Source: Macrostomum lignano
Taxonomy: Eukaryota
Assembly: GCA_002269645.1 (NCBI GenBank)
Contig: NIVC01002841.1
Coordinates: 1 to 33,059 of the forward strand
Length of the DNA: 33,059 nucleotides
Reading direction: 5' to 3'
In this document: positions 1 to 33,059 of the stretch, piece by piece
Layout: each line of letters opens with the position of its first letter
Numbering within the stretch: position 1 is the stretch's first letter
Program-made: the position numbers and the translations under genes
The notes under the pieces: model-generated
Told to the model about the DNA's origin: nothing
The model's input: only the letters and a program-made list of their open reading frames with translations
Databases searched by the model: none

Positions 1-602
1 CTCATCAAGGCGGCGCTTGTACTCTGCCAGCTCCGCGTTCAGTCGCTGCATCGCTCCGGGTCTAGCTGAATGCTGCAGCGCGGCTCGCGCCTGCTCCACC
101 GACGTCAGCACCGAGGCGTCGAACAGTCCGATGCGATTCAGACGCGCCAGTCGCTCGATCGTAGCGTCAAACAGTGCCGCGTTCATTGCCGCGTCCTCGA
201 CGACCGGCTCAGCTTCTGGCTCTTCCTCCTCCTGTTCTGGCGCTGCAGCTTCCGCCTGTTCAGCTGCGGTGATCTCATCAAGGCGGCGCTTGTACTCTGC
301 CAGCTCCGCGTTCAGTCGCTGCATCGCTCCGGGTCTAGCTGAATGCTGCAGCGCGGCTCGCGCCTGCTCCACCGACGTCAGCACCGAGGCGTCGAACAGT
401 CCGATGCGATTCAGACGCGCCAGTCGCTCGATCGTAGCGTCAAACAGTGCCGCGTTCATTGCCGCGTCCTCGACGACCGGCTCAGCTTCTGGCTCTTCCT
501 CCTCCTGTTCTGGCGCTGCAGCTTCCGCCTGTTCAGCTGCGGTGATCTCATCAAGGCGGCGCTTGTACTCTGCCAGCTCCGCGTTCAGTCGCTGCATCGC
601 TC
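1..602 (-). CDS. Frameshifted continuation of the giant protein (about 2.2 more array-B units, open at the window edge)
   Basis: Positions 1-602 are identical to the 273-bp consensus but offset by 1 nt. Unit starts fall at 70, 343, then 615 instead of 616. Confidence 0.7.
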
Positions 603-18600: not shown

Positions 18601-20395
18601 TTCAGTCGCTGCATCGCTCCGGGTCTAGCTGAATGCTGCAGCGCGGCTCGCGCCTGCTCCACCGACGTCAGCACCGAGGCGTCGAACAGTCCGATGCGAT
18701 TCAGACGCGCCAGTCGCTCGATCGTAGCGTCAAACAGTGCCGCGTTCATTGCCGCGTCCTCGACGACCGGCTCAGCTTCTGGCTCTTCCTCCTCCTGTTC
18801 TGGCGCTGCAGCTTCCGCCTGTTCAGCTGCGGTGATCTCATCAAGGCGGCGCTTGTACTCTGCCAGCTCCGCGTTCAGTCGCTGCATCGCTCCGGGTCTA
18901 GCTGAATGCTGCAGCGCGGCTCGCGCCTGCTCCACCGACGTCAGCACCGAGGCGTCGAACAGTCCGATGCGATTCAGACGCGCCAGTCGCTCGATCGTAG
19001 CGTCAAACAGTGCCGCGTTCATTGCCGCGTCCTCGACGACCGGCTCAGCTTCTGGCTCTTCCTCCTCCTGTTCTGGCGCTGCAGCTTCCGCCTGTTCAGC
19101 TGCGGTGATCTCATCAAGGCGGCGCTTGTACTCTGCCAGCTCCGCGTTCAGTCGCTGCATCGCTCCGGGTCTAGCTGAATGCTGCAGCGCGGCTCGCGCC
19201 TGCTCCACCGACGTCAGCACCGAGGCGTCGAACAGTCCGATGCGATTCAGACGCGCCAGTCGCTCGATCGTAGCGTCAAACAGTGCCGCGTTCATTGCCG
19301 CGTCCTCGACGACCGGCTCAGCTTCTGGCTCTTCCTCCTCCTGTTCTGGCGCTGCAGCTTCCGCCTGTTCAGCTGCGGTGATCTCATCAAGGCGGCGCTT
19401 GTACTCTGCCAGCTCCGCGTTCAGTCGCTGCATCGCTCCGGGTCTAGCTGAATGCTGCAGCGCGGCTCGCGCCTGCTCCACCGACGTCAGCACCGAGGCG
19501 TCGAACAGTCCGATGCGATTCAGACGCGCCAGTCGCTCGATCGTAGCGTCAAACAGTGCCGCGTTCATTGCCGCGTCCTCGACGACCGGCTCAGCTTCTG
19601 GCTCTTCCTCCTCCTGTTCTGGCGCTGCAGCTTCCGCCTGTTCAGCTGCGGTGATCTCATCAAGGCGGCGCTTGTACTCTGCCAGCTCCGCGTTCAGTCG
19701 CTGCATCGCTCCGGGTCTAGCTGAATGCTGCAGCGCGGCTCGCGCCTGCTCCACCGACGTCAGCACCGAGGCGTCGAACAGTCCGATGCGATTCAGACGC
19801 GCCAGTCGCTCGATCGTAGCGTCAAACAGTGCCGCGTTCATTGCCGCGTCCTCGACGACCGGCTCAGCTTCTGGCTCTTCCTCCTCCTGTTCTGGCGCTG
19901 CAGCTTCCGCCTGTTCAGCTGCGGTGATCTCATCAAGGCGGCGCTTGTACTCTGCCAGCTCCGCGTTCAGTCGCTGCATCGCTCCGGGTCTAGCTGAATG
20001 CTGCAGCGCGGCTCGCGCCTGCTCCACCGACGTCAGCACCGAGGCGTCGAACAGTCCGATGCGATTCAGACGCGCCAGTCGCTCGATCGTAGCGTCAAAC
20101 AGTGCCGCGTTCATTGCCGCGTCCTCGACGACCGGCTCAGCTTCTGGCTCTTCCTCCTCCTGTTCTGGCGCTGCAGCTTCCGCCTGTTCAGCTGCGGTGA
20201 TCTCATCAAGGCGGCGCTTGTACTCTGCCAGCTCCGCGTTCAGTCGCTGCATCGCTCCGGGTCTAGCTGAATGCTGCAGCGCGGCTCGCGCCTGCTCCAC
20301 CGACGTCAGCACCGAGGCGTCGAACAGTCCGATGCGATTCAGACGCGCCAGTCGCTCGATCGTAGCGTCAAACAGTGCCGCGTTCATTGCCGCGT
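1..20395 (-). repeat. Array B: at least 74.7 tandem copies of a 273-bp (91-aa) unit, AAMNAALFDATIERLARLNRIGLFDASVLTSVEQARAALQHSARPGAMQRLNAELAEYKRRLDEITAAEQAEAAAPEQEEEEPEAEPVVED
   Basis: The period is exactly 273 nt (ORF starts 615, 888 ... 20271, i.e. 72 steps). Translations are identical in three frames in every copy. The consensus match ends at 20395 (gccgcgt|tttct). The unit is about 64% GC (174/273 by hand count). Confidence 0.99.
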
Positions 20396-23300: not shown

Positions 23301-26300
23301 CAACGCACCGTCGAGGCGTTCCATCGATCCGGGTGTTGCACCACTCGACAGCAGAGCCCGTGCCATTCCGACAGATGTCAGCACCGACTCGTCATACAGT
23401 CCAGACGCCTTCAACTTGTTCAGCCTCGAGATCATCAGCTCCGTCACAGCCGCGCTGGTCGGTGCTGCTTCCTCTGGCGGCTGCTTTGACTCGACACGCT
23501 TTCCAACCTCGTCCGTGGAAACCTGTGGCTTCTCGACCTCAGCTGCAGGAGCTTCTGACTTTGGAGTCTCGTCCGGTTGTACGCCATCTTCCTTGTCAAC
23601 GACAGCCGCGGCCAGAAGAGCGTCTCTATCTGACGCTTGCTTCTTGTAAGAATCCAACGCACCGTCGAGGCGTTCCATCGATCCGGGTGTTGCACCACTC
23701 GACAGCAGAGCCCGTGCCATTCCGACAGATGTCAGCACCGACTCGTCATACAGTCCAGACGCCTTCAACTTGTTCAGCCTCGAGATCATCAGCTCCGTCA
23801 CAGCCGCGCTGGTCGGTGCTGCTTCCTCTGGCGGCTGCTTTGACTCGACACGCTTTCCAACCTCGTCCGTGGAAACCTGTGGCTTCTCGACCTCAGCTGC
23901 AGGAGCTTCTGACTTTGGAGTCTCGTCCGGTTGTACGCCATCTTCCTTGTCAACGACAGCCGCGGCCAGAAGAGCGTCTCTATCTGACGCTTGCTTCTTG
24001 TAAGAATCCAACGCACCGTCGAGGCGTTCCATCGATCCGGGTGTTGCACCACTCGACAGCAGAGCCCGTGCCATTCCGACAGATGTCAGCACCGACTCGT
24101 CATACAGTCCAGACGCCTTCAACTTGTTCAGCCTCGAGATCATCAGCTCCGTCACAGCCGCGCTGGTCGGTGCTGCTTCCTCTGGCGGCTGCTTTGACTC
24201 GACACGCTTTCCAACCTCGTCCGTGGAAACCTGTGGCTTCTCGACCTCAGCTGCAGGAGCTTCTGACTTTGGAGTCTCGTCCGGTTGTACGCCATCTTCC
24301 TTGTCAACGACAGCCGCGGCCAGAAGAGCGTCTCTATCTGACGCTTGCTTCTTGTAAGAATCCAACGCACCGTCGAGGCGTTCCATCGATCCGGGTGTTG
24401 CACCACTCGACAGCAGAGCCCGTGCCATTCCGACAGATGTCAGCACCGACTCGTCATACAGTCCAGACGCCTTCAACTTGTTCAGCCTCGAGATCATCAG
24501 CTCCGTCACAGCCGCGCTGGTCGGTGCTGCTTCCTCTGGCGGCTGCTTTGACTCGACACGCTTTCCAACCTCGTCCGTGGAAACCTGTGGCTTCTCGACC
24601 TCAGCTGCAGGAGCTTCTGACTTTGGAGTCTCGTCCGGTTGTACGCCATCTTCCTTGTCAACGACAGCCGCGGCCAGAAGAGCGTCTCTATCTGACGCTT
24701 GCTTCTTGTAAGAATCCAACGCACCGTCGAGGCGTTCCATCGATCCGGGTGTTGCACCACTCGACAGCAGAGCCCGTGCCATTCCGACAGATGTCAGCAC
24801 CGACTCGTCATACAGTCCAGACGCCTTCAACTTGTTCAGCCTCGAGATCATCAGCTCCGTCACAGCCGCGCTGGTCGGTGCTGCTTCCTCTGGCGGCTGC
24901 TTTGACTCGACACGCTTTCCAACCTCGTCCGTGGAAACCTGTGGCTTCTCGACCTCAGCTGCAGGAGCTTCTGACTTTGGAGTCTCGTCCGGTTGTACGC
25001 CATCTTCCTTGTCAACGACAGCCGCGGCCAGAAGAGCGTCTCTATCTGACGCTTGCTTCTTGTAAGAATCCAACGCACCGTCGAGGCGTTCCATCGATCC
25101 GGGTGTTGCACCACTCGACAGCAGAGCCCGTGCCATTCCGACAGATGTCAGCACCGACTCGTCATACAGTCCAGACGCCTTCAACTTGTTCAGCCTCGAG
25201 ATCATCAGCTCCGTCACAGCCGCGCTGGTCGGTGCTGCTTCCTCTGGCGGCTGCTTTGACTCGACACGCTTTCCAACCTCGTCCGTGGAAACCTGTGGCT
25301 TCTCGACCTCAGCTGCAGGAGCTTCTGACTTTGGAGTCTCGTCCGGTTGTACGCCATCTTCCTTGTCAACGACAGCCGCGGCCAGAAGAGCGTCTCTATC
25401 TGACGCTTGCTTCTTGTAAGAATCCAACGCACCGTCGAGGCGTTCCATCGATCCGGGTGTTGCACCACTCGACAGCAGAGCCCGTGCCATTCCGACAGAT
25501 GTCAGCACCGACTCGTCATACAGTCCAGACGCCTTCAACTTGTTCAGCCTCGAGATCATCAGCTCCGTCACAGCCGCGCTGGTCGGTGCTGCTTCCTCTG
25601 GCGGCTGCTTTGACTCGACACGCTTTCCAACCTCGTCCGTGGAAACCTGTGGCTTCTCGACCTCAGCTGCAGGAGCTTCTGACTTTGGAGTCTCGTCCGG
25701 TTGTACGCCATCTTCCTTGTCAACGACAGCCGCGGCCAGAAGAGCGTCTCTATCTGACGCTTGCTTCTTGTAAGAATCCAACGCACCGTCGAGGCGTTCC
25801 ATCGATCCGGGTGTTGCACCACTCGACAGCAGAGCCCGTGCCATTCCGACAGATGTCAGCACCGACTCGTCATACAGTCCAGACGCCTTCAACTTGTTCA
25901 GCCTCGAGATCATCAGCTCCGTCACAGCCGCGCTGGTCGGTGCTGCTTCCTCTGGCGGCTGCTTTGACTCGACACGCTTTCCAACCTCGTCCGTGGAAAC
26001 CTGTGGCTTCTCGACCTCAGCTGCAGGAGCTTCTGACTTTGGAGTCTCGTCCGGTTGTACGCCATCTTCCTTGTCAACGACAGCCGCGGCCAGAAGAGCG
26101 TCTCTATCTGACGCTTGCTTCTTGTAAGAATCCAACGCACCGTCGAGGCGTTCCATCGATCCGGGTGTTGCACCACTCGACAGCAGAGCCCGTGCCATTC
26201 CGACAGATGTCAGCACCGACTCGTCATACAGTCCAGACGCCTTCAACTTGTTCAGCCTCGAGATCATCAGCTCCGTCACAGCCGCGCTGGTCGGTGCTGC

Positions 26301-29300
26301 TTCCTCTGGCGGCTGCTTTGACTCGACACGCTTTCCAACCTCGTCCGTGGAAACCTGTGGCTTCTCGACCTCAGCTGCAGGAGCTTCTGACTTTGGAGTC
26401 TCGTCCGGTTGTACGCCATCTTCCTTGTCAACGACAGCCGCGGCCAGAAGAGCGTCTCTATCTGACGCTTGCTTCTTGTAAGAATCCAACGCACCGTCGA
26501 GGCGTTCCATCGATCCGGGTGTTGCACCACTCGACAGCAGAGCCCGTGCCATTCCGACAGATGTCAGCACCGACTCGTCATACAGTCCAGACGCCTTCAA
26601 CTTGTTCAGCCTCGAGATCATCAGCTCCGTCACAGCCGCGCTGGTCGGTGCTGCTTCCTCTGGCGGCTGCTTTGACTCGACACGCTTTCCAACCTCGTCC
26701 GTGGAAACCTGTGGCTTCTCGACCTCAGCTGCAGGAGCTTCTGACTTTGGAGTCTCGTCCGGTTGTACGCCATCTTCCTTGTCAACGACAGCCGCGGCCA
26801 GAAGAGCGTCTCTATCTGACGCTTGCTTCTTGTAAGAATCCAACGCACCGTCGAGGCGTTCCATCGATCCGGGTGTTGCACCACTCGACAGCAGAGCCCG
26901 TGCCATTCCGACAGATGTCAGCACCGACTCGTCATACAGTCCAGACGCCTTCAACTTGTTCAGCCTCGAGATCATCAGCTCCGTCACAGCCGCGCTGGTC
27001 GGTGCTGCTTCCTCTGGCGGCTGCTTTGACTCGACACGCTTTCCAACCTCGTCCGTGGAAACCTGTGGCTTCTCGACCTCAGCTGCAGGAGCTTCTGACT
27101 TTGGAGTCTCGTCCGGTTGTACGCCATCTTCCTTGTCAACGACAGCCGCGGCCAGAAGAGCGTCTCTATCTGACGCTTGCTTCTTGTAAGAATCCAACGC
27201 ACCGTCGAGGCGTTCCATCGATCCGGGTGTTGCACCACTCGACAGCAGAGCCCGTGCCATTCCGACAGATGTCAGCACCGACTCGTCATACAGTCCAGAC
27301 GCCTTCAACTTGTTCAGCCTCGAGATCATCAGCTCCGTCACAGCCGCGCTGGTCGGTGCTGCTTCCTCTGGCGGCTGCTTTGACTCGACACGCTTTCCAA
27401 CCTCGTCCGTGGAAACCTGTGGCTTCTCGACCTCAGCTGCAGGAGCTTCTGACTTTGGAGTCTCGTCCGGTTGTACGCCATCTTCCTTGTCAACGACAGC
27501 CGCGGCCAGAAGAGCGTCTCTATCTGACGCTTGCTTCTTGTAAGAATCCAACGCACCGTCGAGGCGTTCCATCGATCCGGGTGTTGCACCACTCGACAGC
27601 AGAGCCCGTGCCATTCCGACAGATGTCAGCACCGACTCGTCATACAGTCCAGACGCCTTCAACTTGTTCAGCCTCGAGATCATCAGCTCCGTCACAGCCG
27701 CGCTGGTCGGTGCTGCTTCCTCTGGCGGCTGCTTTGACTCGACACGCTTTCCAACCTCGTCCGTGGAAACCTGTGGCTTCTCGACCTCAGCTGCAGGAGC
27801 TTCTGACTTTGGAGTCTCGTCCGGTTGTACGCCATCTTCCTTGTCAACGACAGCCGCGGCCAGAAGAGCGTCTCTATCTGACGCTTGCTTCTTGTAAGAA
27901 TCCAACGCACCGTCGAGGCGTTCCATCGATCCGGGTGTTGCACCACTCGACAGCAGAGCCCGTGCCATTCCGACAGATGTCAGCACCGACTCGTCATACA
28001 GTCCAGACGCCTTCAACTTGTTCAGCCTCGAGATCATCAGCTCCGTCACAGCCGCGCTGGTCGGTGCTGCTTCCTCTGGCGGCTGCTTTGACTCGACACG
28101 CTTTCCAACCTCGTCCGTGGAAACCTGTGGCTTCTCGACCTCAGCTGCAGGAGCTTCTGACTTTGGAGTCTCGTCCGGTTGTACGCCATCTTCCTTGTCA
28201 ACGACAGCCGCGGCCAGAAGAGCGTCTCTATCTGACGCTTGCTTCTTGTAAGAATCCAACGCACCGTCGAGGCGTTCCATCGATCCGGGTGTTGCACCAC
28301 TCGACAGCAGAGCCCGTGCCATTCCGACAGATGTCAGCACCGACTCGTCATACAGTCCAGACGCCTTCAACTTGTTCAGCCTCGAGATCATCAGCTCCGT
28401 CACAGCCGCGCTGGTCGGTGCTGCTTCCTCTGGCGGCTGCTTTGACTCGACACGCTTTCCAACCTCGTCCGTGGAAACCTGTGGCTTCTCGACCTCAGCT
28501 GCAGGAGCTTCTGACTTTGGAGTCTCGTCCGGTTGTACGCCATCTTCCTTGTCAACGACAGCCGCGGCCAGAAGAGCGTCTCTATCTGACGCTTGCTTCT
28601 TGTAAGAATCCAACGCACCGTCGAGGCGTTCCATCGATCCGGGTGTTGCACCACTCGACAGCAGAGCCCGTGCCATTCCGACAGATGTCAGCACCGACTC
28701 GTCATACAGTCCAGACGCCTTCAACTTGTTCAGCCTCGAGATCATCAGCTCCGTCACAGCCGCGCTGGTCGGTGCTGCTTCCTCTGGCGGCTGCTTTGAC
28801 TCGACACGCTTTCCAACCTCGTCCGTGGTAACCTGTGGCTTCTCGACCTCAGCTGCAGGAGCTTCTGACTTTGGAGTCTCGTCCGGTTGTACGCCATCTT
28901 CCTTGTCAACGACAGCCGCGGCCAGAAGAGCGTCTCTATCTGACGCTTGCTTCTTGTAAGAATCCAACGCACCGTCGAGGCGTTCCATCGATCCGGGTGT
29001 TGCACCACTCGACAGCAGAGCCCGTGCCATTCCGACAGATGTCAGCACCGACTCGTCATACAGTCCAGACGCCTTCAACTTGTTCAGCCTCGAGATCATC
29101 AGCTCCGTCACAGCCGCGCTGGTCGGTGCTGCTTCCTCTGGCGGCTGCTTTGACTCGACACGCTTTCCAACCTCGTCCGTGGTAACCTGTGGCTTCTCGA
29201 CCTCAGCTGCAGGAGCTTCTGACTTTGGAGTCTCGTCCGGTTGTACGCCATCTTCCTTGTCAACGACAGCCGCGGCCAGAAGAGCGTCTCTATCTGACGC

Positions 29301-30623
29301 TTGCTTCTTGTAAGAATCCAACGCACCGTCGAGGCGTTCCATCGATCCGGGTGTTGCACCACTCGACAGCAGAGCCCGTGCCATTCCGACAGATGTCAGC
29401 ACCGACTCGTCATACAGTCCAGACGCCTTCAACTTGTTCAGCCTCGAGATCATCAGCTCCGTCACAGCCGCGCTGGTCGGTGCTGCTTCCTCTGGCGGCT
29501 GCTTTGACTCGACACGCTTTCCAACCTCGTCCGTGGAAACCTGTGGCTTCTCGACCTCAGCTGCAGGAGCTTCTGACTTTGGAGTCTCGTCCGGTTGTAC
29601 GCCATCTTCCTTGTCAACGACAGCCGCGGCCAGAAGAGCGTCTCTATCTGACGCTTGCTTCTTGTAAGAATCCAACGCACCGTCGAGGCGTTCCATCGAT
29701 CCGGGTGTTGCACCACTCGACAGCAGAGCCCGTGCCATTCCGACAGATGTCAGCACCGACTCGTCATACAGTCCAGACGCCTTCAACTTGTTCAGCCTCG
29801 AGATCATCAGCTCCGTCACAGCCGCGCTGGTCGGTGCTGCTTCCTCTGGCGGCTGCTTTGACTCGACACGCTTTCCAACCTCGTCCGTGGTAACCTGTGG
29901 CTTCTCGACCTCAGCTGCAGGAGCTTCTGACTTTGGAGTCTCGTCCGGTTGTACGCCATCTTCCTTGTCAACGACAGCCGCGGCCAGAAGAGCGTCTCTA
30001 TCTGACGCTTGCTTCTTGTAAGAATCCAACGCACCGTCGAGGCGTTCCATCGATCCGGGTGTTGCACCACTCGACAGCAGAGCCCGTGCCATTCCGACAG
30101 ATGTCAGCACCGACTCGTCATACAGTCCAGACGCCTTCAACTTGTTCAGCCTCGAGATCATCAGCTCCGTCACAGCCGCGCTGGTCGGTGCTGCTTCCTC
30201 TGGCGGCTGCTTTGACTCGACACGCTTTCCAACCTCGTCCGTGGTAACCTGTGGCTTCTCGACCTCAGCTGCAGGAGCTTCTGACTTTGGAGTCTCGTCC
30301 GGTTGTACGCCATCTTCCTTGTCAACGACAGCCGCGGCCAGAAGAGCGTCTCTATCTGACGCTTGCTTCTTGTAAGAATCCAACGCACCGTCGAGGCGTT
30401 CCATCGATCCGGGTGTTGCACCACTCGACAGCAGAGCCCGTGCCATTCCGACAGATGTCAGCACCGACTCGTCATACAGTCCAGACGCCTTCAACTTGTT
30501 CAGCCTCGAGATCATCAGCTCCGTCACAGCCGCGCTGGTCGGTGCTGCTTCTCTGGCGGCTGCTTTAAAGCTTTTTCGGAAGATTTTCTTTCCATTGCTT
30601 TTTAGCTTTTTAATGCAAAGCAA
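585..30623 (-). CDS. Giant tandem-repeat protein, family unknown (10,012 aa as assembled; probable true extent from before position 1 to 30595, at least ~10,190 aa)
   Basis: This is the only frame that stays open through array A, the 370-codon unique segment (roughly 40% GC, so chance openness is very unlikely) and array B. The two repeat units align at protein level in this frame. The listed start at 30623 is TTG, not ATG. The listed stop at 585-587 follows directly from a 1-bp deletion at 602, so both ends are probably artefacts. Confidence 0.85.
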   Translation of the reverse strand: MLCIKKLKSNGKKIFRKSFKAAAREAAPTSAAVTELMISRLNKLKASGLYDESVLTSVGMARALLSSGATPGSMERLDGALDSYKKQASDRDALLAAAVVDKEDGVQPDETPKSEAPAAEVEKPQVTTDEVGKRVESKQPPEEAAPTSAAVTELMISRLNKLKASGLYDESVLTSVGMARALLSSGATPGSMERLDGALDSYKKQASDRDALLAAAVVDKEDGVQPDETPKSEAPAAEVEKPQVTTDEVGKRVESKQPPEEAAPTSAAVTELMISRLNKLKASGLYDESVLTSVGMARALLSSGATPGSMERLDGALDSYKKQASDRDALLAAAVVDKEDGVQPDETPKSEAPAAEVEKPQVSTDEVGKRVESKQPPEEAAPTSAAVTELMISRLNKLKASGLYDESVLTSVGMARALLSSGATPGSMERLDGALDSYKKQASDRDALLAAAVVDKEDGVQPDETPKSEAPAAEVEKPQVTTDEVGKRVESKQPPEEAAPTSAAVTELMISRLNKLKASGLYDESVLTSVGMARALLSSGATPGSMERLDGALDSYKKQASDRDALLAAAVVDKEDGVQPDETPKSEAPAAEVEKPQVTTDEVGKRVESKQPPEEAAPTSAAVTELMISRLNKLKASGLYDESVLTSVGMARALLSSGATPGSMERLDGALDSYKKQASDRDALLAAAVVDKEDGVQPDETPKSEAPAAEVEKPQVSTDEVGKRVESKQPPEEAAPTSAAVTELMISRLNKLKASGLYDESVLTSVGMARALLSSGATPGSMERLDGALDSYKKQASDRDALLAAAVVDKEDGVQPDETPKSEAPAAEVEKPQVSTDEVGKRVESKQPPEEAAPTSAAVTELMISRLNKLKASGLYDESVLTSVGMARALLSSGATPGSMERLDGALDSYKKQASDRDALLAAAVVDKEDGVQPDETPKSEAPAAEVEKPQVSTDEVGKRVESKQPPEEAAPTSAAVTELMISRLNKLKASGLYDESVLTSVGMARALLSSGATPGSMERLDGALDSYKKQASDRDALLAAAVVDKEDGVQPDETPKSEAPAAEVEKPQVSTDEVGKRVESKQPPEEAAPTSAAVTELMISRLNKLKASGLYDESVLTSVGMARALLSSGATPGSMERLDGALDSYKKQASDRDALLAAAVVDKEDGVQPDETPKSEAPAAEVEKPQVSTDEVGKRVESKQPPEEAAPTSAAVTELMISRLNKLKASGLYDESVLTSVGMARALLSSGATPGSMERLDGALDSYKKQASDRDALLAAAVVDKEDGVQPDETPKSEAPAAEVEKPQVSTDEVGKRVESKQPPEEAAPTSAAVTELMISRLNKLKASGLYDESVLTSVGMARALLSSGATPGSMERLDGALDSYKKQASDRDALLAAAVVDKEDGVQPDETPKSEAPAAEVEKPQVSTDEVGKRVESKQPPEEAAPTSAAVTELMISRLNKLKASGLYDESVLTSVGMARALLSSGATPGSMERLDGALDSYKKQASDRDALLAAAVVDKEDGVQPDETPKSEAPAAEVEKPQVSTDEVGKRVESKQPPEEAAPTSAAVTELMISRLNKLKASGLYDESVLTSVGMARALLSSGATPGSMERLDGALDSYKKQASDRDALLAAAVVDKEDGVQPDETPKSEAPAAEVEKPQVSTDEVGKRVESKQPPEEAAPTSAAVTELMISRLNKLKASGLYDESVLTSVGMARALLSSGATPGSMERLDGALDSYKKQASDRDALLAAAVVDKEDGVQPDETPKSEAPAAEVEKPQVSTDEVGKRVESKQPPEEAAPTSAAVTELMISRLNKLKASGLYDESVLTSVGMARALLSSGATPGSMERLDGALDSYKKQASDRDALLAAAVVDKEDGVQPDETPKSEAPAAEVEKPQVSTDEVGKRVESKQPPEEAAPTSAAVTELMISRLNKLKASGLYDESVLTSVGMARALLSSGATPGSMERLDGALDSYKKQASDRDALLAAAVVDKEDGVQPDETPKSEAPAAEVEKPQVSTDEVGKRVESKQPPEEAAPTSAAVTELMISRLNKLKASGLYDESVLTSVGMARALLSSGATPGSMERLDGALDSYKKQASDRDALLAAAVVDKEDGVQPDETPKSEAPAAEVEKPQVSTDEVGKRVESKQPPEEAAPTSAAVTELMISRLNKLKASGLYDESVLTSVGMARALLSSGATPGSMERLDGALDSYKKQASDRDALLAAAVVDKEDGVQPDETPKSEAPAAEVEKPQVSTDEVGKRVESKQPPEEAAPTSAAVTELMISRLNKLKASGLYDESVLTSVGMARALLSSGATPGSMERLDGALDSYKKQASDRDALLAAAVVDKEDGVQPDETPKSEAPAAEVEKPQVSTDEVGKRVESKQPPEEAAPTSAAVTELMISRLNKLKASGLYDESVLTSVGMARALLSSGATPGSMERLDGALDSYKKQASDRDALLAAAVVDKEDGVQPDETPKSEAPAAEVEKPQVSTDEVGKRVESKQPPEEAAPTSAAVTELMISRLNKLKASGLYDESVLTSVGMARALLSSGATPGSMERLDGALDSYKKQASDRDALLAAAVVDKEDGVQPDETPKSEAPAAEVEKPQVSTDEVGKRVESKQPPEEAAPTSAAVTELMISRLNKLKASGLYDESVLTSVGMARALLSSGATPGSMERLDGALDSYKKQASDRDALLAAAVVDKEDGVQPDETPKSEAPAAEVEKPQVSTDEVGKRVESKQPPEEAAPTSAAVTELMISRLNKLKASGLYDESVLTSVGMARALLSSGATPGSMERLDGALDSYKKQASDRDALLAAAVVDKEDGVQPDETPKSEAPAAEVEKPQVSTDEVGKRVESKQPPEEAAPTSAAVTELMISRLNKLKASGLYDESVLTSVGMARALLSSGATPGSMERLDGALDSYKKQASDRDALLAAAVVDKEDGVQPDETPKSEAPAAEVEKPQVSTDEVGKRVESKQPPEEAAPTSAAVTELMISRLNKLKASGLYDESVLTSVGMARALLSSGATPGSMERLDGALDSYKKQASMLTVIGQENKVTEQQRWKDLVDQINFLCSVYPSDSLSPMPLVHGLHKLVDARPMFLQELRPGIRSLASGVQLCHSSFLVKGVLQQLRIARSAELIQFLVSPLRQTMVELMRCKFWSWISERHTAEVAQISYWIEIASNSENQLSSCRNVNLSEFFNSIHRQLEILHSRRSYWHGLQISMVSMNKFLVADFSAELSNCLAMLNKYALLNSDMVRFELSMKTAIGHISEATDYYCEAIQCSLLRIPLKKLRYEFLTESTRSFLYQAPRLLLTEGSTWKKFLSIFLHAEKGLQHQLTKGQSAPVGRQALGRFKRLLHIYTKDFDHTRNYILSTGLWQIQQKTTDSLPKMLPFRNEIADTIEFQYEQKQETKKENAAMNAALFDATIERLARLNRIGLFDASVLTSVEQARAALQHSARPGAMQRLNAELAEYKRRLDEITAAEQAEAAAPEQEEEEPEAEPVVEDAAMNAALFDATIERLARLNRIGLFDASVLTSVEQARAALQHSARPGAMQRLNAELAEYKRRLDEITAAEQAEAAAPEQEEEEPEAEPVVEDAAMNAALFDATIERLARLNRIGLFDASVLTSVEQARAALQHSARPGAMQRLNAELAEYKRRLDEITAAEQAEAAAPEQEEEEPEAEPVVEDAAMNAALFDATIERLARLNRIGLFDASVLTSVEQARAALQHSARPGAMQRLNAELAEYKRRLDEITAAEQAEAAAPEQEEEEPEAEPVVEDAAMNAALFDATIERLARLNRIGLFDASVLTSVEQARAALQHSARPGAMQRLNAELAEYKRRLDEITAAEQAEAAAPEQEEEEPEAEPVVEDAAMNAALFDATIERLARLNRIGLFDASVLTSVEQARAALQHSARPGAMQRLNAELAEYKRRLDEITAAEQAEAAAPEQEEEEPEAEPVVEDAAMNAALFDATIERLARLNRIGLFDASVLTSVEQARAALQHSARPGAMQRLNAELAEYKRRLDEITAAEQAEAAAPEQEEEEPEAEPVVEDAAMNAALFDATIERLARLNRIGLFDASVLTSVEQARAALQHSARPGAMQRLNAELAEYKRRLDEITAAEQAEAAAPEQEEEEPEAEPVVEDAAMNAALFDATIERLARLNRIGLFDASVLTSVEQARAALQHSARPGAMQRLNAELAEYKRRLDEITAAEQAEAAAPEQEEEEPEAEPVVEDAAMNAALFDATIERLARLNRIGLFDASVLTSVEQARAALQHSARPGAMQRLNAELAEYKRRLDEITAAEQAEAAAPEQEEEEPEAEPVVEDAAMNAALFDATIERLARLNRIGLFDASVLTSVEQARAALQHSARPGAMQRLNAELAEYKRRLDEITAAEQAEAAAPEQEEEEPEAEPVVEDAAMNAALFDATIERLARLNRIGLFDASVLTSVEQARAALQHSARPGAMQRLNAELAEYKRRLDEITAAEQAEAAAPEQEEEEPEAEPVVEDAAMNAALFDATIERLARLNRIGLFDASVLTSVEQARAALQHSARPGAMQRLNAELAEYKRRLDEITAAEQAEAAAPEQEEEEPEAEPVVEDAAMNAALFDATIERLARLNRIGLFDASVLTSVEQARAALQHSARPGAMQRLNAELAEYKRRLDEITAAEQAEAAAPEQEEEEPEAEPVVEDAAMNAALFDATIERLARLNRIGLFDASVLTSVEQARAALQHSARPGAMQRLNAELAEYKRRLDEITAAEQAEAAAPEQEEEEPEAEPVVEDAAMNAALFDATIERLARLNRIGLFDASVLTSVEQARAALQHSARPGAMQRLNAELAEYKRRLDEITAAEQAEAAAPEQEEEEPEAEPVVEDAAMNAALFDATIERLARLNRIGLFDASVLTSVEQARAALQHSARPGAMQRLNAELAEYKRRLDEITAAEQAEAAAPEQEEEEPEAEPVVEDAAMNAALFDATIERLARLNRIGLFDASVLTSVEQARAALQHSARPGAMQRLNAELAEYKRRLDEITAAEQAEAAAPEQEEEEPEAEPVVEDAAMNAALFDATIERLARLNRIGLFDASVLTSVEQARAALQHSARPGAMQRLNAELAEYKRRLDEITAAEQAEAAAPEQEEEEPEAEPVVEDAAMNAALFDATIERLARLNRIGLFDASVLTSVEQARAALQHSARPGAMQRLNAELAEYKRRLDEITAAEQAEAAAPEQEEEEPEAEPVVEDAAMNAALFDATIERLARLNRIGLFDASVLTSVEQARAALQHSARPGAMQRLNAELAEYKRRLDEITAAEQAEAAAPEQEEEEPEAEPVVEDAAMNAALFDATIERLARLNRIGLFDASVLTSVEQARAALQHSARPGAMQRLNAELAEYKRRLDEITAAEQAEAAAPEQEEEEPEAEPVVEDAAMNAALFDATIERLARLNRIGLFDASVLTSVEQARAALQHSARPGAMQRLNAELAEYKRRLDEITAAEQAEAAAPEQEEEEPEAEPVVEDAAMNAALFDATIERLARLNRIGLFDASVLTSVEQARAALQHSARPGAMQRLNAELAEYKRRLDEITAAEQAEAAAPEQEEEEPEAEPVVEDAAMNAALFDATIERLARLNRIGLFDASVLTSVEQARAALQHSARPGAMQRLNAELAEYKRRLDEITAAEQAEAAAPEQEEEEPEAEPVVEDAAMNAALFDATIERLARLNRIGLFDASVLTSVEQARAALQHSARPGAMQRLNAELAEYKRRLDEITAAEQAEAAAPEQEEEEPEAEPVVEDAAMNAALFDATIERLARLNRIGLFDASVLTSVEQARAALQHSARPGAMQRLNAELAEYKRRLDEITAAEQAEAAAPEQEEEEPEAEPVVEDAAMNAALFDATIERLARLNRIGLFDASVLTSVEQARAALQHSARPGAMQRLNAELAEYKRRLDEITAAEQAEAAAPEQEEEEPEAEPVVEDAAMNAALFDATIERLARLNRIGLFDASVLTSVEQARAALQHSARPGAMQRLNAELAEYKRRLDEITAAEQAEAAAPEQEEEEPEAEPVVEDAAMNAALFDATIERLARLNRIGLFDASVLTSVEQARAALQHSARPGAMQRLNAELAEYKRRLDEITAAEQAEAAAPEQEEEEPEAEPVVEDAAMNAALFDATIERLARLNRIGLFDASVLTSVEQARAALQHSARPGAMQRLNAELAEYKRRLDEITAAEQAEAAAPEQEEEEPEAEPVVEDAAMNAALFDATIERLARLNRIGLFDASVLTSVEQARAALQHSARPGAMQRLNAELAEYKRRLDEITAAEQAEAAAPEQEEEEPEAEPVVEDAAMNAALFDATIERLARLNRIGLFDASVLTSVEQARAALQHSARPGAMQRLNAELAEYKRRLDEITAAEQAEAAAPEQEEEEPEAEPVVEDAAMNAALFDATIERLARLNRIGLFDASVLTSVEQARAALQHSARPGAMQRLNAELAEYKRRLDEITAAEQAEAAAPEQEEEEPEAEPVVEDAAMNAALFDATIERLARLNRIGLFDASVLTSVEQARAALQHSARPGAMQRLNAELAEYKRRLDEITAAEQAEAAAPEQEEEEPEAEPVVEDAAMNAALFDATIERLARLNRIGLFDASVLTSVEQARAALQHSARPGAMQRLNAELAEYKRRLDEITAAEQAEAAAPEQEEEEPEAEPVVEDAAMNAALFDATIERLARLNRIGLFDASVLTSVEQARAALQHSARPGAMQRLNAELAEYKRRLDEITAAEQAEAAAPEQEEEEPEAEPVVEDAAMNAALFDATIERLARLNRIGLFDASVLTSVEQARAALQHSARPGAMQRLNAELAEYKRRLDEITAAEQAEAAAPEQEEEEPEAEPVVEDAAMNAALFDATIERLARLNRIGLFDASVLTSVEQARAALQHSARPGAMQRLNAELAEYKRRLDEITAAEQAEAAAPEQEEEEPEAEPVVEDAAMNAALFDATIERLARLNRIGLFDASVLTSVEQARAALQHSARPGAMQRLNAELAEYKRRLDEITAAEQAEAAAPEQEEEEPEAEPVVEDAAMNAALFDATIERLARLNRIGLFDASVLTSVEQARAALQHSARPGAMQRLNAELAEYKRRLDEITAAEQAEAAAPEQEEEEPEAEPVVEDAAMNAALFDATIERLARLNRIGLFDASVLTSVEQARAALQHSARPGAMQRLNAELAEYKRRLDEITAAEQAEAAAPEQEEEEPEAEPVVEDAAMNAALFDATIERLARLNRIGLFDASVLTSVEQARAALQHSARPGAMQRLNAELAEYKRRLDEITAAEQAEAAAPEQEEEEPEAEPVVEDAAMNAALFDATIERLARLNRIGLFDASVLTSVEQARAALQHSARPGAMQRLNAELAEYKRRLDEITAAEQAEAAAPEQEEEEPEAEPVVEDAAMNAALFDATIERLARLNRIGLFDASVLTSVEQARAALQHSARPGAMQRLNAELAEYKRRLDEITAAEQAEAAAPEQEEEEPEAEPVVEDAAMNAALFDATIERLARLNRIGLFDASVLTSVEQARAALQHSARPGAMQRLNAELAEYKRRLDEITAAEQAEAAAPEQEEEEPEAEPVVEDAAMNAALFDATIERLARLNRIGLFDASVLTSVEQARAALQHSARPGAMQRLNAELAEYKRRLDEITAAEQAEAAAPEQEEEEPEAEPVVEDAAMNAALFDATIERLARLNRIGLFDASVLTSVEQARAALQHSARPGAMQRLNAELAEYKRRLDEITAAEQAEAAAPEQEEEEPEAEPVVEDAAMNAALFDATIERLARLNRIGLFDASVLTSVEQARAALQHSARPGAMQRLNAELAEYKRRLDEITAAEQAEAAAPEQEEEEPEAEPVVEDAAMNAALFDATIERLARLNRIGLFDASVLTSVEQARAALQHSARPGAMQRLNAELAEYKRRLDEITAAEQAEAAAPEQEEEEPEAEPVVEDAAMNAALFDATIERLARLNRIGLFDASVLTSVEQARAALQHSARPGAMQRLNAELAEYKRRLDEITAAEQAEAAAPEQEEEEPEAEPVVEDAAMNAALFDATIERLARLNRIGLFDASVLTSVEQARAALQHSARPGAMQRLNAELAEYKRRLDEITAAEQAEAAAPEQEEEEPEAEPVVEDAAMNAALFDATIERLARLNRIGLFDASVLTSVEQARAALQHSARPGAMQRLNAELAEYKRRLDEITAAEQAEAAAPEQEEEEPEAEPVVEDAAMNAALFDATIERLARLNRIGLFDASVLTSVEQARAALQHSARPGAMQRLNAELAEYKRRLDEITAAEQAEAAAPEQEEEEPEAEPVVEDAAMNAALFDATIERLARLNRIGLFDASVLTSVEQARAALQHSARPGAMQRLNAELAEYKRRLDEITAAEQAEAAAPEQEEEEPEAEPVVEDAAMNAALFDATIERLARLNRIGLFDASVLTSVEQARAALQHSARPGAMQRLNAELAEYKRRLDEITAAEQAEAAAPEQEEEEPEAEPVVEDAAMNAALFDATIERLARLNRIGLFDASVLTSVEQARAALQHSARPGAMQRLNAELAEYKRRLDEITAAEQAEAAAPEQEEEEPEAEPVVEDAAMNAALFDATIERLARLNRIGLFDASVLTSVEQARAALQHSARPGAMQRLNAELAEYKRRLDEITAAEQAEAAAPEQEEEEPEAEPVVEDAAMNAALFDATIERLARLNRIGLFDASVLTSVEQARAALQHSARPGAMQRLNAELAEYKRRLDEITAAEQAEAAAPEQEEEEPEAEPVVEDAAMNAALFDATIERLARLNRIGLFDASVLTSVEQARAALQHSARPGAMQRLNAELAEYKRRLDEITAAEQAEAAAPEQEEEEPEAEPVVEDAAMNAALFDATIERLARLNRIGLFDASVLTSVEQARAALQHSARPGAMQRLNAELAEYKRRLDEITAAEQAEAAAPEQEEEEPEAEPVVEDAAMNAALFDATIERLARLNRIGLFDASVLTSVEQARAALQHSARPGAMQRLNAELAEYKRRLDEITAAEQAEAAAPEQEEEEPEAEPVVEDAAMNAALFDATIERLARLNRIGLFDASVLTSVEQARAALQHSARPGAMQRLNAELAEYKRRLDEITAAEQAEAAAPEQEEEEPEAEPVVEDAAMNAALFDATIERLARLNRIGLFDASVLTSVEQARAALQHSARPGAMQRLNAELAEYKRRLDEITAAEQAEAAAPEQEEEEPEAEPVVEDAAMNAALFDATIERLARLNRIGLFDASVLTSVEQARAALQHSARPGAMQRLNAELAEYKRRLDEITAAEQAEAAAPEQEEEEPEAEPVVEDAAMNAALFDATIERLARLNRIGLFDASVLTSVEQARAALQHSARPGAMQRLNAELAEYKRRLDEITAAEQAEAAAPEQEEEEPEAEPVVEDAAMNAALFDATIERLARLNRIGLFDASVLTSVEQARAALQHSARPGAMQRLNAELAEYKRRLDEITAAEQAEAAAPEQEEEEPEAEPVVEDAAMNAALFDATIERLARLNRIGLFDASVLTSVEQARAALQHSARPGAMQRLNAELAEYKRRLDEITAAEQAEAAAPEQEEEEPEAEPVVEDAAMNAALFDATIERLARLNRIGLFDASVLTSVEQARAALQHSARPGAMQRLNAELAEYKRRLDEITAAEQAEAAAPEQEEEEPEAEPVVEDAAMNAALFDATIERLARLNRIGLFDASVLTSVEQARAALQHSARPGAMQRLNAELAEYKRRLDEITAAEQAEAAAPEQEEEEPEAEPVVEDAAMNAALFDATIERLARLNRIGLFDASVLTSVEQARAALQHSARPGAMQRLNAELAEYKRRLDEITAAEQAEAAAPEQEEEEPEAEPVVEDAAMNAALFDATIERLARLNRIGLFDASVLTSVEQARAALQHSARPGAMQRLNAELAEYKRRLDEITAAEQAEAAAPEQEEEEPEAEPVVEDAAMNAALFDATIERLARLNRIGLFDASVLTSVEQARAALQHSARPERCSD
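20396..21506 (-). other. Unique in-frame ~370-aa segment between the arrays (Leu/Ser/Phe-rich, probably a folded helical domain)
   Basis: It runs MLTVIGQENK...EQKQETKKEN with no stops, no repeats and roughly 40% GC in the lines I sampled. It holds the only Cys and Trp residues of the frame-corrected protein. I recognise no motif. Confidence 0.75.
21507..30566 (-). repeat. Array A: about 25.6 tandem copies of a 354-bp (118-aa) unit, EAAPTSAAVTELMISRLNKLKASGLYDESVLTSVGMARALLSSGATPGSMERLDGALDSYKKQASDRDALLAAAVVDKEDGVQPDETPKSEAPAAEVEKPQV(S/T)TDEVGKRVESKQPPE
   Basis: The period is exactly 354 nt (ORF starts 21513, 21867 ... 30363). It begins at tgacgcttgc (21507) and ends at ctgcttt (30566). The unit is about 58% GC (205/354). 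One A/T polymorphic site is visible among copies. Confidence 0.99.
30593..30612 (-). promoter_or_regulatory. Probable true start codon (ATG at 30595-30593) with Kozak-like context and an upstream TAAAAAGC doublet
   Basis: The minus strand reads TAAAAAGC TAAAAAGC A ATG G, with a purine at -3 and G at +4. An in-frame TAA lies 3 codons upstream. The ATG is in frame with the repeat-consensus reading KQPPEE once the missing C at 30551 is restored. There is no SD-like AGGAGG. Confidence 0.55.
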
Positions 30624-31960: not shown

Positions 31961-31966
31961 TGAGGT

Positions 31967-32907: not shown

Positions 32908-33059
32908 TATGGTTCAAATTCAAGCGTGTTCATATTTCAGAAAGCTAGATTTTTCAAAGTTTAGAAGGCTCAATAGGTTCAGTGACTCCTCGAGTCTCGG
33001 GTGACTCAGGCGACTCCTGTGACTCAGAGGCGATCTTCAGCCGAGGCAAAGGCGGCTCA

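What the first reader, a model, noticed from the sequence alone, without database searches (positions are those of the whole stretch)
1..30595. Titin-scale beads-on-a-string protein: about 100 copies of one small helical module on acidic, PEVK-like linkers
Seen: at least 74 B units and about 26 A units in one frame, each a ~56-aa amphipathic module plus a low-complexity linker. The A linker DKEDGVQPDETPKSEAPAAEVEKPQVSTDEVGKRVESKQPPEE is 25/43 P/E/V/K. The B linker EQAEAAAPEQEEEEPEAEPVVED is dominated by E, A and P. The corrected N-terminus (MERKSSEKALKQPPEE) is hydrophilic with no signal peptide, and the repeats have no Cys, no Trp and no transmembrane stretch. Established: titin's elasticity comes from folded modules in series with disordered PEVK segments, and giant repeat proteins serve as cytoskeletal scaffolds in protists. 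Inference: this is an intracellular elastic filament, molecular ruler or multivalent scaffold of more than 1 MDa. I cannot place it in a family, so it may be undescribed.
Basis: partly seen in the sequence, partly recalled or inferred. Interest (0 to 1): 0.85.

Follow-up and report, generated by a model that had tools for sequence, protein, structure and literature searches.

The report
Giant orphan repeat protein of a flatworm
The window is a whole contig of the flatworm Macrostomum lignano that carries most of a real, transcribed gene with no relatives elsewhere, encoding a protein of about 0.65 to over 1 MDa built from about 100 near-identical small three-helix bundles joined by acidic floppy linkers; its function is unknown.

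Summary
On the minus strand there are 74.7 copies of a 273-bp unit (B, 91 aa) and 25.6 copies of a 354-bp unit (A, 118 aa). They are joined in frame by a unique 371-codon segment.

The window is a complete 33,059-bp contig of Macrostomum lignano (assembly GCA_002269645.1). The B array therefore runs off the contig end, and the gene is incomplete here.

A fully spanned paralogous copy (L002) shows the whole plan: MERKSSEKALKQPPEE, A array, S1 domain, B array, S2 domain (a homologue of S1), a third array C (98 aa x 11.7), a 150-aa tail, then a stop.

- **Coding is well supported.** The evidence is codon-position divergence, dN/dS of about 0.4 between module types, 6 synonymous to 2 non-synonymous changes between copies of S1, and RNA-seq-derived partial gene models.
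- **The two frameshifts look like errors.** Both are 1-bp deletions in short base runs, and the other copies are intact at those sites.
- **Structure.** AlphaFold2 predicts the module as a three-helix bundle (pLDDT 86.5). The linkers fall on the disordered side of the charge-hydropathy plot.
- **No family.** Pfam and PDB give no significant match, and none of 1.84 billion representative proteins outside this species is a credible relative.
- **Open points.** The elastic-filament or ruler function is untested. The >1 MDa size rests on an unspanned perfect array; the spanned copy gives about 6,000 aa.

The parts
1..20393 (-). B array: 74 full units plus one partial unit of 273 bp (91 aa). Each unit is a 64-aa three-helix module plus a 27-aa E/A/P-rich acidic linker. 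The array runs off the contig end.
   Evidence: 73/74 units are identical in DNA; fold prediction; linker charge and disorder.
601..601 (-). 1-bp deletion (CCCGGAGCG -> CCCGAGCG) in B unit 72. It causes the stop at 585-587. Probably an assembly error.
   Evidence: All other B units in the window, and those in L001 and L002, are intact.
20394..21506 (-). S1 domain: a unique 371-aa, all-helical, basic (pI 9.1) domain with 7 Cys and 7 Trp. It is fused in frame between the last A module and the first B module.
   Evidence: 0 stops in this frame against 13-30 in the other five; 25% identity over 336 aa with S2, E=3e-33; 6 synonymous and 2 non-synonymous substitutions against L001; predicted helical secondary structure at low confidence.
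21507..30548 (-). A array: 25 full units of 354 bp (118 aa: a 64-aa module plus a 54-aa P/E/V/K-rich acidic linker), plus a final module-only unit that abuts S1.
30549..30595 (-). N-terminal leader MERKSSEKALKQPPE(E), with the ATG at 30593-30595. A 1-bp deletion (GAGGAA -> GAGAA) at about 30551 puts it out of frame in this contig.
   Evidence: The intact in-frame version is seen in L002 and L001. An in-frame stop lies 3 codons upstream of the ATG.
30596..31966 (-). AT-rich upstream non-coding region, presumably 5'UTR and promoter.
   Evidence: no convincing ORF; the whole upstream flank, 1-2492 of the minus strand (minisatellite and contig end included), aligns to L001 at 97% identity; no Rfam match.
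31967..32907 (.). 16-bp minisatellite GGTTCAGGGATCAGTG x 59. The same minisatellite lies upstream of the gene at the paralogous loci.

Best explanation
This is most of a real, transcribed, single-exon gene of the free-living flatworm Macrostomum lignano. No relative outside the species was found.

The protein is cytoplasmic and has no signal peptide or TM segment. The full plan, read from paralog L002, is:
1. a short hydrophilic leader;
2. array A: a 64-aa module plus a 54-aa acidic linker;
3. S1, a 370-aa helical, basic, Cys/Trp-containing domain;
4. array B: module plus a 27-aa acidic linker;
5. S2, a homologue of S1;
6. array C: module plus a 35-aa acidic linker;
7. a 150-aa tail.

Shown:
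- The three module types are old paralogues. They are 42-56% identical, with dS 0.6-1.35 and dN/dS about 0.4.
- The module is predicted to be a compact three-helix bundle.
- The linkers have the charge and hydropathy of disordered chains.
- Units within an array are essentially identical.
- Copy numbers as assembled differ between genomic copies.

Inferred:
- The arrays are kept uniform and resized by unequal recombination.
- The protein acts as a very long, flexible, strongly polyanionic tether or scaffold (pI 4.5, net charge about -900 in the window).
- The bundles are repeated docking or spacing beads, the acidic linkers are entropic springs, and the two basic S domains and the tail are the specific attachment points.
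- The two frameshifts in the window are assembly errors.
For: Organism and copies:
- The S1 query hits PAA54909.1 of M. lignano at 99% identity.
- Its cluster holds a 580-aa partial CDS on a 33,059-bp contig, which is this window, and a third copy on a 435-kb contig.

Coding:
- S1 is open only in the minus frame.
- A versus B identity by codon position is 63/58/47%, and 14 of 29 conserved residues use different codons.
- dN/dS is 0.39-0.43 between module types.
- Between the window and L001, S1 carries 6 synonymous and 2 non-synonymous changes.
- Unit lengths of 354, 273 and 294 bp are all multiples of 3, and every junction is in frame.

Transcription:
- The GenBank models of this assembly derive only from RNA-seq transcripts (PMC5730564).
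- Such models cover A units plus S1 (P0001-P0003) and the C array (P0004).

Frameshifts:
- Each copy has its own 1-bp deletions in short base runs at sites that are intact in the other copies.

Fold:
- AlphaFold2 gives pLDDT 86.5 and pTM 0.71, with helices 2-21, 26-42 and 45-71.
- The same helix boundaries appear in the low-confidence long model.

Linkers and localisation:
- Linkers carry net -7 to -11 and lie on the disordered side of the Uversky boundary, while modules lie on the folded side.
- No TM-like stretch, a hydrophilic N-terminus and an upstream in-frame stop.

Full architecture.
Against: - Function is not tested at all. I found no expression site, localisation or phenotype.
- No transcript is shown to span A, S1, B, S2 and C. 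The annotated CDSs are fragments, and no B-array CDS is annotated.
- The 3-sequence alignment behind the AlphaFold2 model is shallow.
- Perfect identity of units within and between loci could partly be a polishing artefact, since unique sequence differs by about 0.7% between the window and L001.
- All three copies carry frameshifts as assembled, so pseudogenisation is not formally excluded.
- An upstream exon encoding a signal peptide, spliced in just before the ATG, cannot be ruled out from DNA alone.
Confidence: 0.55

Rival explanations
1. The gene is real, but the megadalton size and perfect uniformity come from the assembly. The 20-kb B array at the contig end was over-extended or homogenised during PacBio assembly and polishing. 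The true protein is then nearer the spanned L002 version, about 6,000 aa or 0.65 MDa.
For: - The window is a whole contig that ends inside the array.
- B copy number is 17.9 in the only copy flanked by unique sequence on both sides (L002), against >=36.5 and >=74.7 in the copies that run off the fetched locus or the contig.
- Unit consensus sequences are identical between loci whose unique DNA differs by 0.7-1%.
- Locus L003 shows inverted B and C arrays typical of chimeric assembly.
- All copies carry deletion errors in short base runs.
Against: - The window keeps a private T/A variant in A units 0, 1, 3 and 4 that is absent from L001 and L002, so the arrays were not blindly homogenised.
- Collapse of L002 is as plausible as expansion of the window.
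- Repeat-number variation between duplicated copies is common in tandem-repeat genes (general knowledge).
Confidence: 0.35
2. It is a secreted or extracellular material such as an adhesive, mucus-like or rhabdite component. The model would be the giant two-array adhesive protein Mlig-ap2 of the same animal.
For: - Mlig-ap2 has two consecutive homogeneous repeat regions, 21 x 255 aa and 25 x 221 aa (PMC8621496). Giant repeat proteins of that kind therefore exist in this species.
- The 5' end of the gene is not covered by an annotated model.
Against: - The N-terminus is hydrophilic, an in-frame stop lies 3 codons upstream of the ATG, and no hydrophobic stretch is present.
- None of the vWD, TIL, C8, TSP-1 or LDL domains, and no other Pfam domain, is found.
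- The repeats have no Cys.
- Unit lengths and sequences differ from those of ap2.
Confidence: 0.08
3. It is non-coding satellite DNA, or a dead gene, that merely stays open because a stop-free unit is repeated.
For: - Antisense frames are also open across each array: 343..20532 and 21506..28831 on the plus strand.
- Every assembled copy has frameshifts.
- No B-unit protein exists in the 5.8-billion-protein collection.
Against: - The unique 1.1-kb S1 segment is open only in the minus frame.
- Synonymous changes outnumber non-synonymous ones between copies.
- dN/dS is about 0.4 and the third codon position is the least conserved between A, B and C modules.
- S1 and S2 are homologous at 25% identity with E=3e-33, which indicates long-term protein-level constraint.
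- Transcript-derived CDS models lie on this strand.
- The A-array variant is Ser/Thr on the minus strand, whereas the plus-strand ORF stops at 28831, short of the variant-bearing units 0-4.
Confidence: 0.05
4. The protein is not mechanical. It is a polyanionic cation (for example Ca2+) buffer or the scaffold of a condensate, and the number of acidic linkers is what matters.
For: - Net charge is -7 to -10 per unit and the overall pI is 4.5.
- The linkers are the least conserved part between array types, yet they are always acidic.
Against: - A conserved, folded module under purifying selection and two conserved S domains are not needed for simple buffering.
- No direct evidence supports or excludes this reading.
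Confidence: 0.12

Closest known systems
Titin (I-band Ig domains plus PEVK segment)
   Same: A giant intracellular protein with folded modules in series with proline/glutamate-rich disordered segments. The A linker is 58% P/E/V/K.
   Different: - Titin modules are Ig/Fn3 beta-sandwiches, whereas these are 64-aa three-helix bundles.
- Titin's PEVK is one contiguous block, whereas here a linker follows every module.
- This protein has no kinase and no Ig/Fn3 Pfam hits.
- Titin is encoded by hundreds of exons with diverged repeats, whereas this is one exon with identical units.
- There is no sequence homology.
Spectrin-repeat rods (spectrin, nesprins, plakins)
   Same: Tandem three-helix bundles forming long intracellular scaffolds.
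   Different: - Spectrin repeats are about 106 aa and are joined by a continuous helix without disordered acidic linkers.
- The Pfam Spectrin match is 19.4 bits against a cut-off of 29.9.
- Foldseek finds no significant match to the spectrin fold.
- This protein has no CH, KASH or plakin domains.
Staphylococcal Ebh/Embp (about 1 MDa helical-bundle repeat proteins)
   Same: Megadalton size reached by tens of tandem copies of small alpha-helical bundle modules (PMC7587433 abstract).
   Different: Ebh/Embp are bacterial, secreted and surface-anchored, have FIVAR/GA-type modules, and lack alternating acidic linkers. There is no homology.
Mlig-ap2, the giant adhesive protein of the same species
   Same: Same organism. 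Consecutive arrays of highly uniform long repeats, which short-read transcriptomes cannot assemble (PMC8621496).
   Different: ap2 is secreted and glycosylated. It is flanked by vWD/TIL/C8/LDL/TSP-1 domains and has units of 255 and 221 aa. None of these features is present here.
Single-exon repeat giants with near-identical, copy-number-variable units (AHNAK, filaggrin, trichohyalin). Recalled from general knowledge, not tested here.
   Same: One large exon, near-identical tandem units, and copy number that differs between copies (A 25.6/16.6/19.6; B >=74.7/>=36.5/17.9).
   Different: The sequences and folds are unrelated, and the S100/PDZ-type flanking domains of those proteins are absent here.
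MIT domains and the TBCC N-terminal domain (best fold matches)
   Same: A small antiparallel three-helix bundle of about 70 residues.
   Different: The Foldseek matches are not significant: E 0.7-1.3, TM 0.45-0.64, and 12-13% identity. This is a generic fold resemblance only.

Membership tests
Titin/connectin family | Tandem Ig (I-set) and Fn3 domains | tested here: not met
   Pfam scans of the A, B and C units, S1, S2 and the tail give no I-set or fn3 hits. The module is predicted to be all-helical.
Titin/connectin family | A contiguous PEVK region (about 70% or more P/E/V/K, in 26-28-residue PPAK motifs and polyE segments) | tested here: not met
   The linkers are 27-54 aa and are interspersed after each module. 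P/E/V/K is 25/43 in the A linker and 15/23 in the B linker, with no Lys in B. The resemblance is in composition only.
Spectrin repeat (PF00435) | A match at or above the Pfam gathering score, and about 106-aa periodicity | tested here: not met
   The match scores 19.4 bits against a cut-off of 29.9. The folded module is about 64-70 aa.
MIT domain | Significant structural or sequence similarity to the MIT three-helix bundle | tested here: not met
   The best Foldseek hit, 4a5x_A, has E=0.7, TM 0.45 and 12% identity. There is no Pfam MIT hit.
Flatworm adhesive protein ap2 | A signal peptide, vWD/TIL/C8/LDL/TSP-1 flanking domains, and 255-aa and 221-aa repeat units | tested here: not met
   The N-terminus is hydrophilic with an upstream in-frame stop. 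No such Pfam domains are found. Units are 118, 91 and 98 aa. The ap2 features are taken from PMC8621496.
Generic class: giant modular 'beads-on-a-string' structural proteins | Many tandem folded modules separated by disordered linkers in one polypeptide | tested here: met
   The fold is predicted with confidence. The linkers lie on the disordered side of the charge-hydropathy plot. About 100 units lie in one frame once two 1-bp deletions are repaired.
Generic class: giant modular 'beads-on-a-string' structural proteins | Expression as a single giant polypeptide with a mechanical or scaffolding role | not testable with these tools
   Only fragmentary transcript-derived CDS models are available. 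I found no proteomic, localisation or phenotype data.

The most novel reading that the evidence does not exclude
The protein founds a previously undescribed family that may be restricted to macrostomid flatworms. It would be a megadalton, cytoplasmic, polyanionic 'bead-and-spring' protein in which a new three-helix module and a new 370-aa S domain build a novel cytoskeletal or tethering element. Candidate sites in this animal are the complex sperm, cilia-associated structures or anchor cells. Its length would be tuned rapidly by unequal recombination and would differ between the subgenomes of this recent polyploid.
Probability: 0.2. Interest if true: 0.65.

Novelty: new variant of a known kind. 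Interest (0 to 1): 0.45.

Why it matters
M. lignano is a laboratory model with established RNAi, in situ hybridisation and transgenesis. One of its largest genes has no relatives, no name and only fragmentary 'hypothetical protein' models, yet its function can be tested directly using the unique S1 segment as probe and RNAi target.

The locus is also a natural example of a megadalton protein built from identical three-helix beads and acidic linkers. That makes it a useful subject for single-molecule mechanics and for studying how recombination resizes coding arrays in a recent polyploid.

It also shows how repeat masking and short-read transcriptomes hide such genes. The GenBank annotation of this assembly excluded transcripts overlapping repeat annotations (PMC5730564).

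Tried and rejected
Protein family and homology searches:
- Pfam on the A, B and C units, S1, S2 and the tail gave nothing above the curated cut-offs. The best were RF-1, Spectrin and Ish1 at 19-21 bits, and HBM at 17 bits.
- PDB sequence and profile searches gave only a chance match to a KDPG-aldolase TIM-barrel segment sharing 'GxVTSVEQxR' (E=0.008). I rejected it as biologically meaningless. S1/S2 and the tail gave no hits.
- The search for homologous proteins with the A+B alignment and with two B units gave no hits. The first search even missed P0001, which contains exact A units. This is a sensitivity caveat of the word pre-filter.
- The full HMMER scan of 1.84 billion representatives returned only M. 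lignano proteins plus two bacterial repeat proteins, P0005 and P0006. I judged those spurious: different repeats, and E-values inflated by the repeats.
- An exact 42-mer from the B unit has no match in viral contigs.

Structure:
- Single-sequence AlphaFold2 of A-module+S1+B-module reached only pLDDT 39 and is unusable for a fold search.
- The Foldseek PDB search with the module model found nothing significant.
- I tested whether the S domain is made of degenerate modules. hhalign gave probability 2.8%. Smith-Waterman shuffles gave p of about 0.04 for B against S2 (IERLARL/IERYARL) and were not significant for the other pairs. This is not established.

Expression and other:
- A full-text search found no paper holding 'Mlig011518'. 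Neither Mlig011518 nor Mlig012374 occurs in the supplements held for five papers. Two further papers have no supplements held.
- Rfam finds nothing in the upstream flank.
- I did not scan the bacterial/archaeal genome or metagenome collections, because the source is a flatworm.
Full report
**1. What is in the window.**
Tandem Repeats Finder reports a 273-bp unit x 74.7 copies at 1-20395 and a 354-bp unit x 25.6 copies at 21507-30566, both at 99% matches. It also reports a 16-bp minisatellite at 31967-32907. The arrays are GC-rich (64% and 58%), while the sequence between and beside them is 42-45% GC.

A minus-strand ORF of 10,012 aa runs from 30623 to 585.
- 25 full A units of 118 aa, plus a 26th that stops after the module;
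- a unique 371-aa segment, which I call S1;
- B units of 91 aa that continue to base 1.

At the DNA level 73 of 74 B units are identical. The A units differ at one T/A site (Ser/Thr), in units 0, 1, 3 and 4.

**2. Source.**
The S1 segment hits a Macrostomum lignano hypothetical protein at 99% identity: PAA54909.1, BOX15_Mlig011518g2, partial. Its 90% cluster has two more members:
- a 580-aa doubly partial CDS on a contig of exactly 33,059 bp, which is this window;
- a 309-aa CDS on a 435-kb contig.

The window is therefore a complete contig of assembly GCA_002269645.1 (Mlig_3_7, PacBio). The B array is cut by the contig end.

**3. The paralogous copies show the whole gene.**

| Feature | L001 (NIVC01002842.1) | L002 (NIVC01000838.1) |
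|---|---|---|
| Upstream | same 16-bp minisatellite | tubulin-domain gene, then minisatellite x 73 |
| Start | in-frame ATG, MERKSSEKASKQPPEE | in-frame ATG, MERKSSEKALKQPPEE |
| A array | 16.6 units | 19.6 units |
| S1 | 99.2% identical to the window | 1 mismatch and 3 one-base deletions against the window |
| B array | >=36.5 units, runs off the fetched locus | 17.9 units |
| Beyond B | not fetched | S2 (378-aa query segment), array C (294 bp, 98 aa, x 11.7), ~150-aa tail, stop |

L002 is spanned end to end. S2 is homologous to S1, with 25% identity over 336 aa and E=3e-33. The C module is 56% identical to B, and A is 42% identical to B.

The gene plan is therefore leader-A(n)-S1-B(n)-S2-C(n)-tail. 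The window holds the leader, A, S1 and part of B. A fourth locus, L003 (NIVC01001166.1, carrying PAA71394.1 made of C units), has B and C arrays in inverted orientation next to a forward C array, with 3% indels. It looks chimeric.

**4. Is it coding?**
- **S1 frame.** S1 has 0 stops in the minus frame and 13-30 in the other five.
- **Module divergence.** Between A and B modules, identity by codon position is 63/58/47%, and 14 of 29 conserved residues use different codons.
- **dN/dS.** Nei-Gojobori dN/dS between module cores is 0.39-0.43, with dS of 0.6-1.35.
- **Copies of S1.** Between the window and L001, the in-frame part of S1 carries 8 substitutions. Only two change the protein, A->T and I->M. 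With a neutral expectation of about 25% synonymous changes, 6 or more synonymous out of 8 has a binomial probability of about 0.004. This is my own calculation.
- **Frame.** All three unit lengths are multiples of three and every junction is in frame.
- **Antisense ORFs.** The long plus-strand ORFs (343..20532 and 21506..28831) are the trivial result of repeating a stop-free unit. They do not cross S1. The A-array one ends at 28831, short of variant-bearing units 0-4, while the T/A variant is a conservative Ser/Thr change on the minus strand.
- **Transcription.** The GenBank annotation of this assembly was built only from RNA-seq-derived transcripts (StringTie plus a de novo transcriptome, then TBONE and TransDecoder). 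This explains why only fragments around S1 and one stretch of C are annotated. It also shows that this strand is transcribed.

**5. The frameshifts.**
The window has two, both GG->G deletions:
- one puts the ATG leader out of frame, at about 30551;
- one lies in B unit 72 at 601 and creates the stop at 585.

L001 has two CC->C deletions in S1. L002 has GG->G twice and A6->A5. Every site is intact in the other copies. Independent single-base deletions in short base runs point more to assembly or consensus error than to three independently decayed genes. Only raw reads can settle this.

**6. Structure.**
- **Module fold.** With the 3-sequence alignment of B, A and C modules, AlphaFold2 predicts a three-helix bundle for the 72-aa B module. 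Mean pLDDT is 86.5 and pTM is 0.71, with helices at 2-21, 26-42 and 45-71.
- **Cross-check.** The same helix boundaries appear in the low-confidence single-sequence model of A-module+S1+B-module, which is helical throughout (pLDDT 39).
- **Invariant residues.** Across A, B and C these include the core leucines and valines. They also include a polar cluster in the helix1-helix2 loop and the start of helix 2: G-x-[FY]-D-x-S-V-x-T-S-V-x-x-x-R.
- **Charge.** Modules are near-neutral to slightly basic (A and B pI 8.4-8.6, C 6.2). Linkers carry net -7 to -11. S1 is basic (pI 9.1) with 7 Cys and 7 Trp.
- **Disorder.** On the charge-hydropathy plot the modules fall on the folded side and all three linkers on the disordered side.
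- **Localisation signals.** No 19-residue window reaches TM-like hydropathy. The N-terminus is hydrophilic, and an in-frame stop lies three codons upstream of the ATG.

**7. Relatives.**
No Pfam family reaches its cut-off for any part. PDB sequence and profile searches give only a chance motif match to KDPG aldolase. Foldseek against the PDB gives no match with E below 0.7; the top hits are MIT domains and the TBCC N-terminal domain, which are generic three-helix bundles. A full HMMER scan of 1.84 billion representative proteins returns only M. lignano's own fragments plus two unrelated bacterial repeat proteins. The family has no detectable relatives outside this species in the data available. 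Other Macrostomum species may not be represented in those protein sets; I did not check.

**8. Size and uniformity.**
The corrected window alone encodes about 10,200 aa, 1.10 MDa, pI 4.5. Adding S2, C and the tail would give about 11,900 aa. The only copy with arrays flanked by unique sequence, L002, gives about 6,000 aa.

| Array | Window | L001 | L002 |
|---|---|---|---|
| A | 25.6 | 16.6 | 19.6 |
| B | >=74.7 | >=36.5 | 17.9 |

Unit consensus sequences are identical in all loci, while unique DNA differs by about 0.7% between the window and L001. From my own calculation I would expect about 4 differences in the 627 bp of A plus B consensus, and none is seen.

Two explanations are possible: recombination or gene conversion keeps the arrays uniform, or polishing with multi-mapping reads erased the variants. 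The private T/A variant in four 5' A units of the window argues against complete artificial homogenisation. I treat '>1 MDa' as plausible but unproven.

**9. How it most likely works (inference).**
The protein alternates compact three-helix beads of about 7 kDa with acidic, proline-containing chains of 27-54 residues. Two or more basic, Cys/Trp-containing helical S domains and a unique tail interrupt this pattern.

The simplest reading is a long, flexible, strongly polyanionic cytoplasmic tether or multivalent scaffold:
- The S domains and the tail give specific attachment.
- The beads give repeated docking or spacing sites. Their conserved polar loop is the candidate surface.
- The linkers act as entropic springs whose mutual repulsion keeps the chain extended.

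At about 0.38 nm per residue for extended linkers and about 4 nm per bundle, the part in the window could reach roughly 1.5-1.7 micrometres. This estimate is mine and was not measured. Unequal crossing-over within the arrays would change length quickly. The high GC and GC3 of the arrays (0.59-0.67, against 0.41 in S1) fit frequent recombination with GC-biased conversion, but that too is inference.

Tissue, partners and phenotype are unknown. The transcript ids Mlig011518 and Mlig012374 do not occur in any text or supplement I could search.

**10. Comparison with known systems.**
- **Architecture.** It resembles titin (modules plus PEVK), spectrin-type rods (tandem three-helix bundles) and staphylococcal Ebh/Embp (about 1 MDa of helical bundles; PMC7587433). 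Genetically it resembles single-exon repeat giants with copy-number variation.
- **Same species.** M. lignano already has a giant protein with two consecutive uniform arrays, the secreted adhesive Mlig-ap2 with 21 x 255 aa and 25 x 221 aa repeats (PMC8621496).
- **Membership.** It fails every membership test I could run. It has no Ig/Fn3 domains, no spectrin profile, no significant MIT-like similarity, and no signal peptide or ap2 domains.
- **Classification.** I classify it as a new variant of a known kind: a giant beads-on-a-string protein built from a new module and a new S domain.

**11. Verdict.**
The coding and 'undescribed family' parts of the interpretation hold. The mechanical function and the exact megadalton size remain open. 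Interest is moderate. Lineage-specific giant repeat proteins are not rare in eukaryotes, but this one sits in a tractable model animal and can be tested directly.

Noticed in passing
window 31967-32907; L001 2430-3365; L002 314-1488: A 16-bp minisatellite (GGTTCAGGGATCAGTG, 58-73 copies) lies about 1.4 kb upstream of the gene's ATG at all three loci. It sits between the giant gene and the upstream neighbour.
   Followed up: partly
L003 1-13723 (NIVC01001166.1): C-like (290 bp) and B arrays in reverse orientation, with 3% indels, abut a forward C array of 17.5 units. No S domains lie between them. This looks like a chimeric or palindromic mis-assembly, or else a rearranged copy. PAA71394.1 is annotated on it.
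   Followed up: partly
window 1-30566: Base composition differs strongly within one ORF. GC3 is 0.67 in B, 0.59 in A and 0.41 in S1, and GC is 64/58/42%. This could reflect GC-biased gene conversion in the recombining arrays.
   Followed up: no
S1 residues about 198-225 (window about 20832-20915); S2 residues about 188-215 in L002: Helix 1 and the following loop of the module (IERLARLNRIGLFDASVLTSVE) align weakly to the centre of both S domains (IERYARLSKSLTKFEYALLKSIQ in S2). hhalign gives probability 2.8%; shuffle p is about 0.04 for B against S2 and 0.17 for B against S1. This hints that S contains a degenerate module but is not significant.
   Followed up: yes
window 32960-33059 (minus strand); L002 1-233: The contig end encodes '...EPPLPRLKIAS...'. 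This matches the last codons of the upstream neighbour, which in L002 is a 452-aa product with Tubulin and Tubulin_C domains. The two copies differ in where the stop falls.
   Followed up: partly
window 343-20532 and 21506-28831 (plus strand): Antisense ORFs of 6,729 and 2,441 aa are open only because the repeated unit lacks a stop in that frame. They do not cross S1, and the A-array one ends at 28831, short of the variant-bearing units. Automated ORF callers could mis-annotate them.
   Followed up: yes
search tool behaviour (against 18, 40): The word-indexed protein search with the A+B alignment, and with two B units, returned nothing. Yet P0001, which is in the collection, contains two exact A units. 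Low-complexity words probably saturated the candidate list, so negative results from that tool for repeat queries are weak.
   Followed up: no
module residues 9-58: The module shares 'G.(V/L)TSVEQ(A/C)R' and flanking residues with a beta/alpha segment of Thermotoga KDPG aldolase and the nanocages designed from it (E=0.008 to 0.3). I judged this a chance match, because the aldolase segment is part of a TIM barrel.
   Followed up: yes
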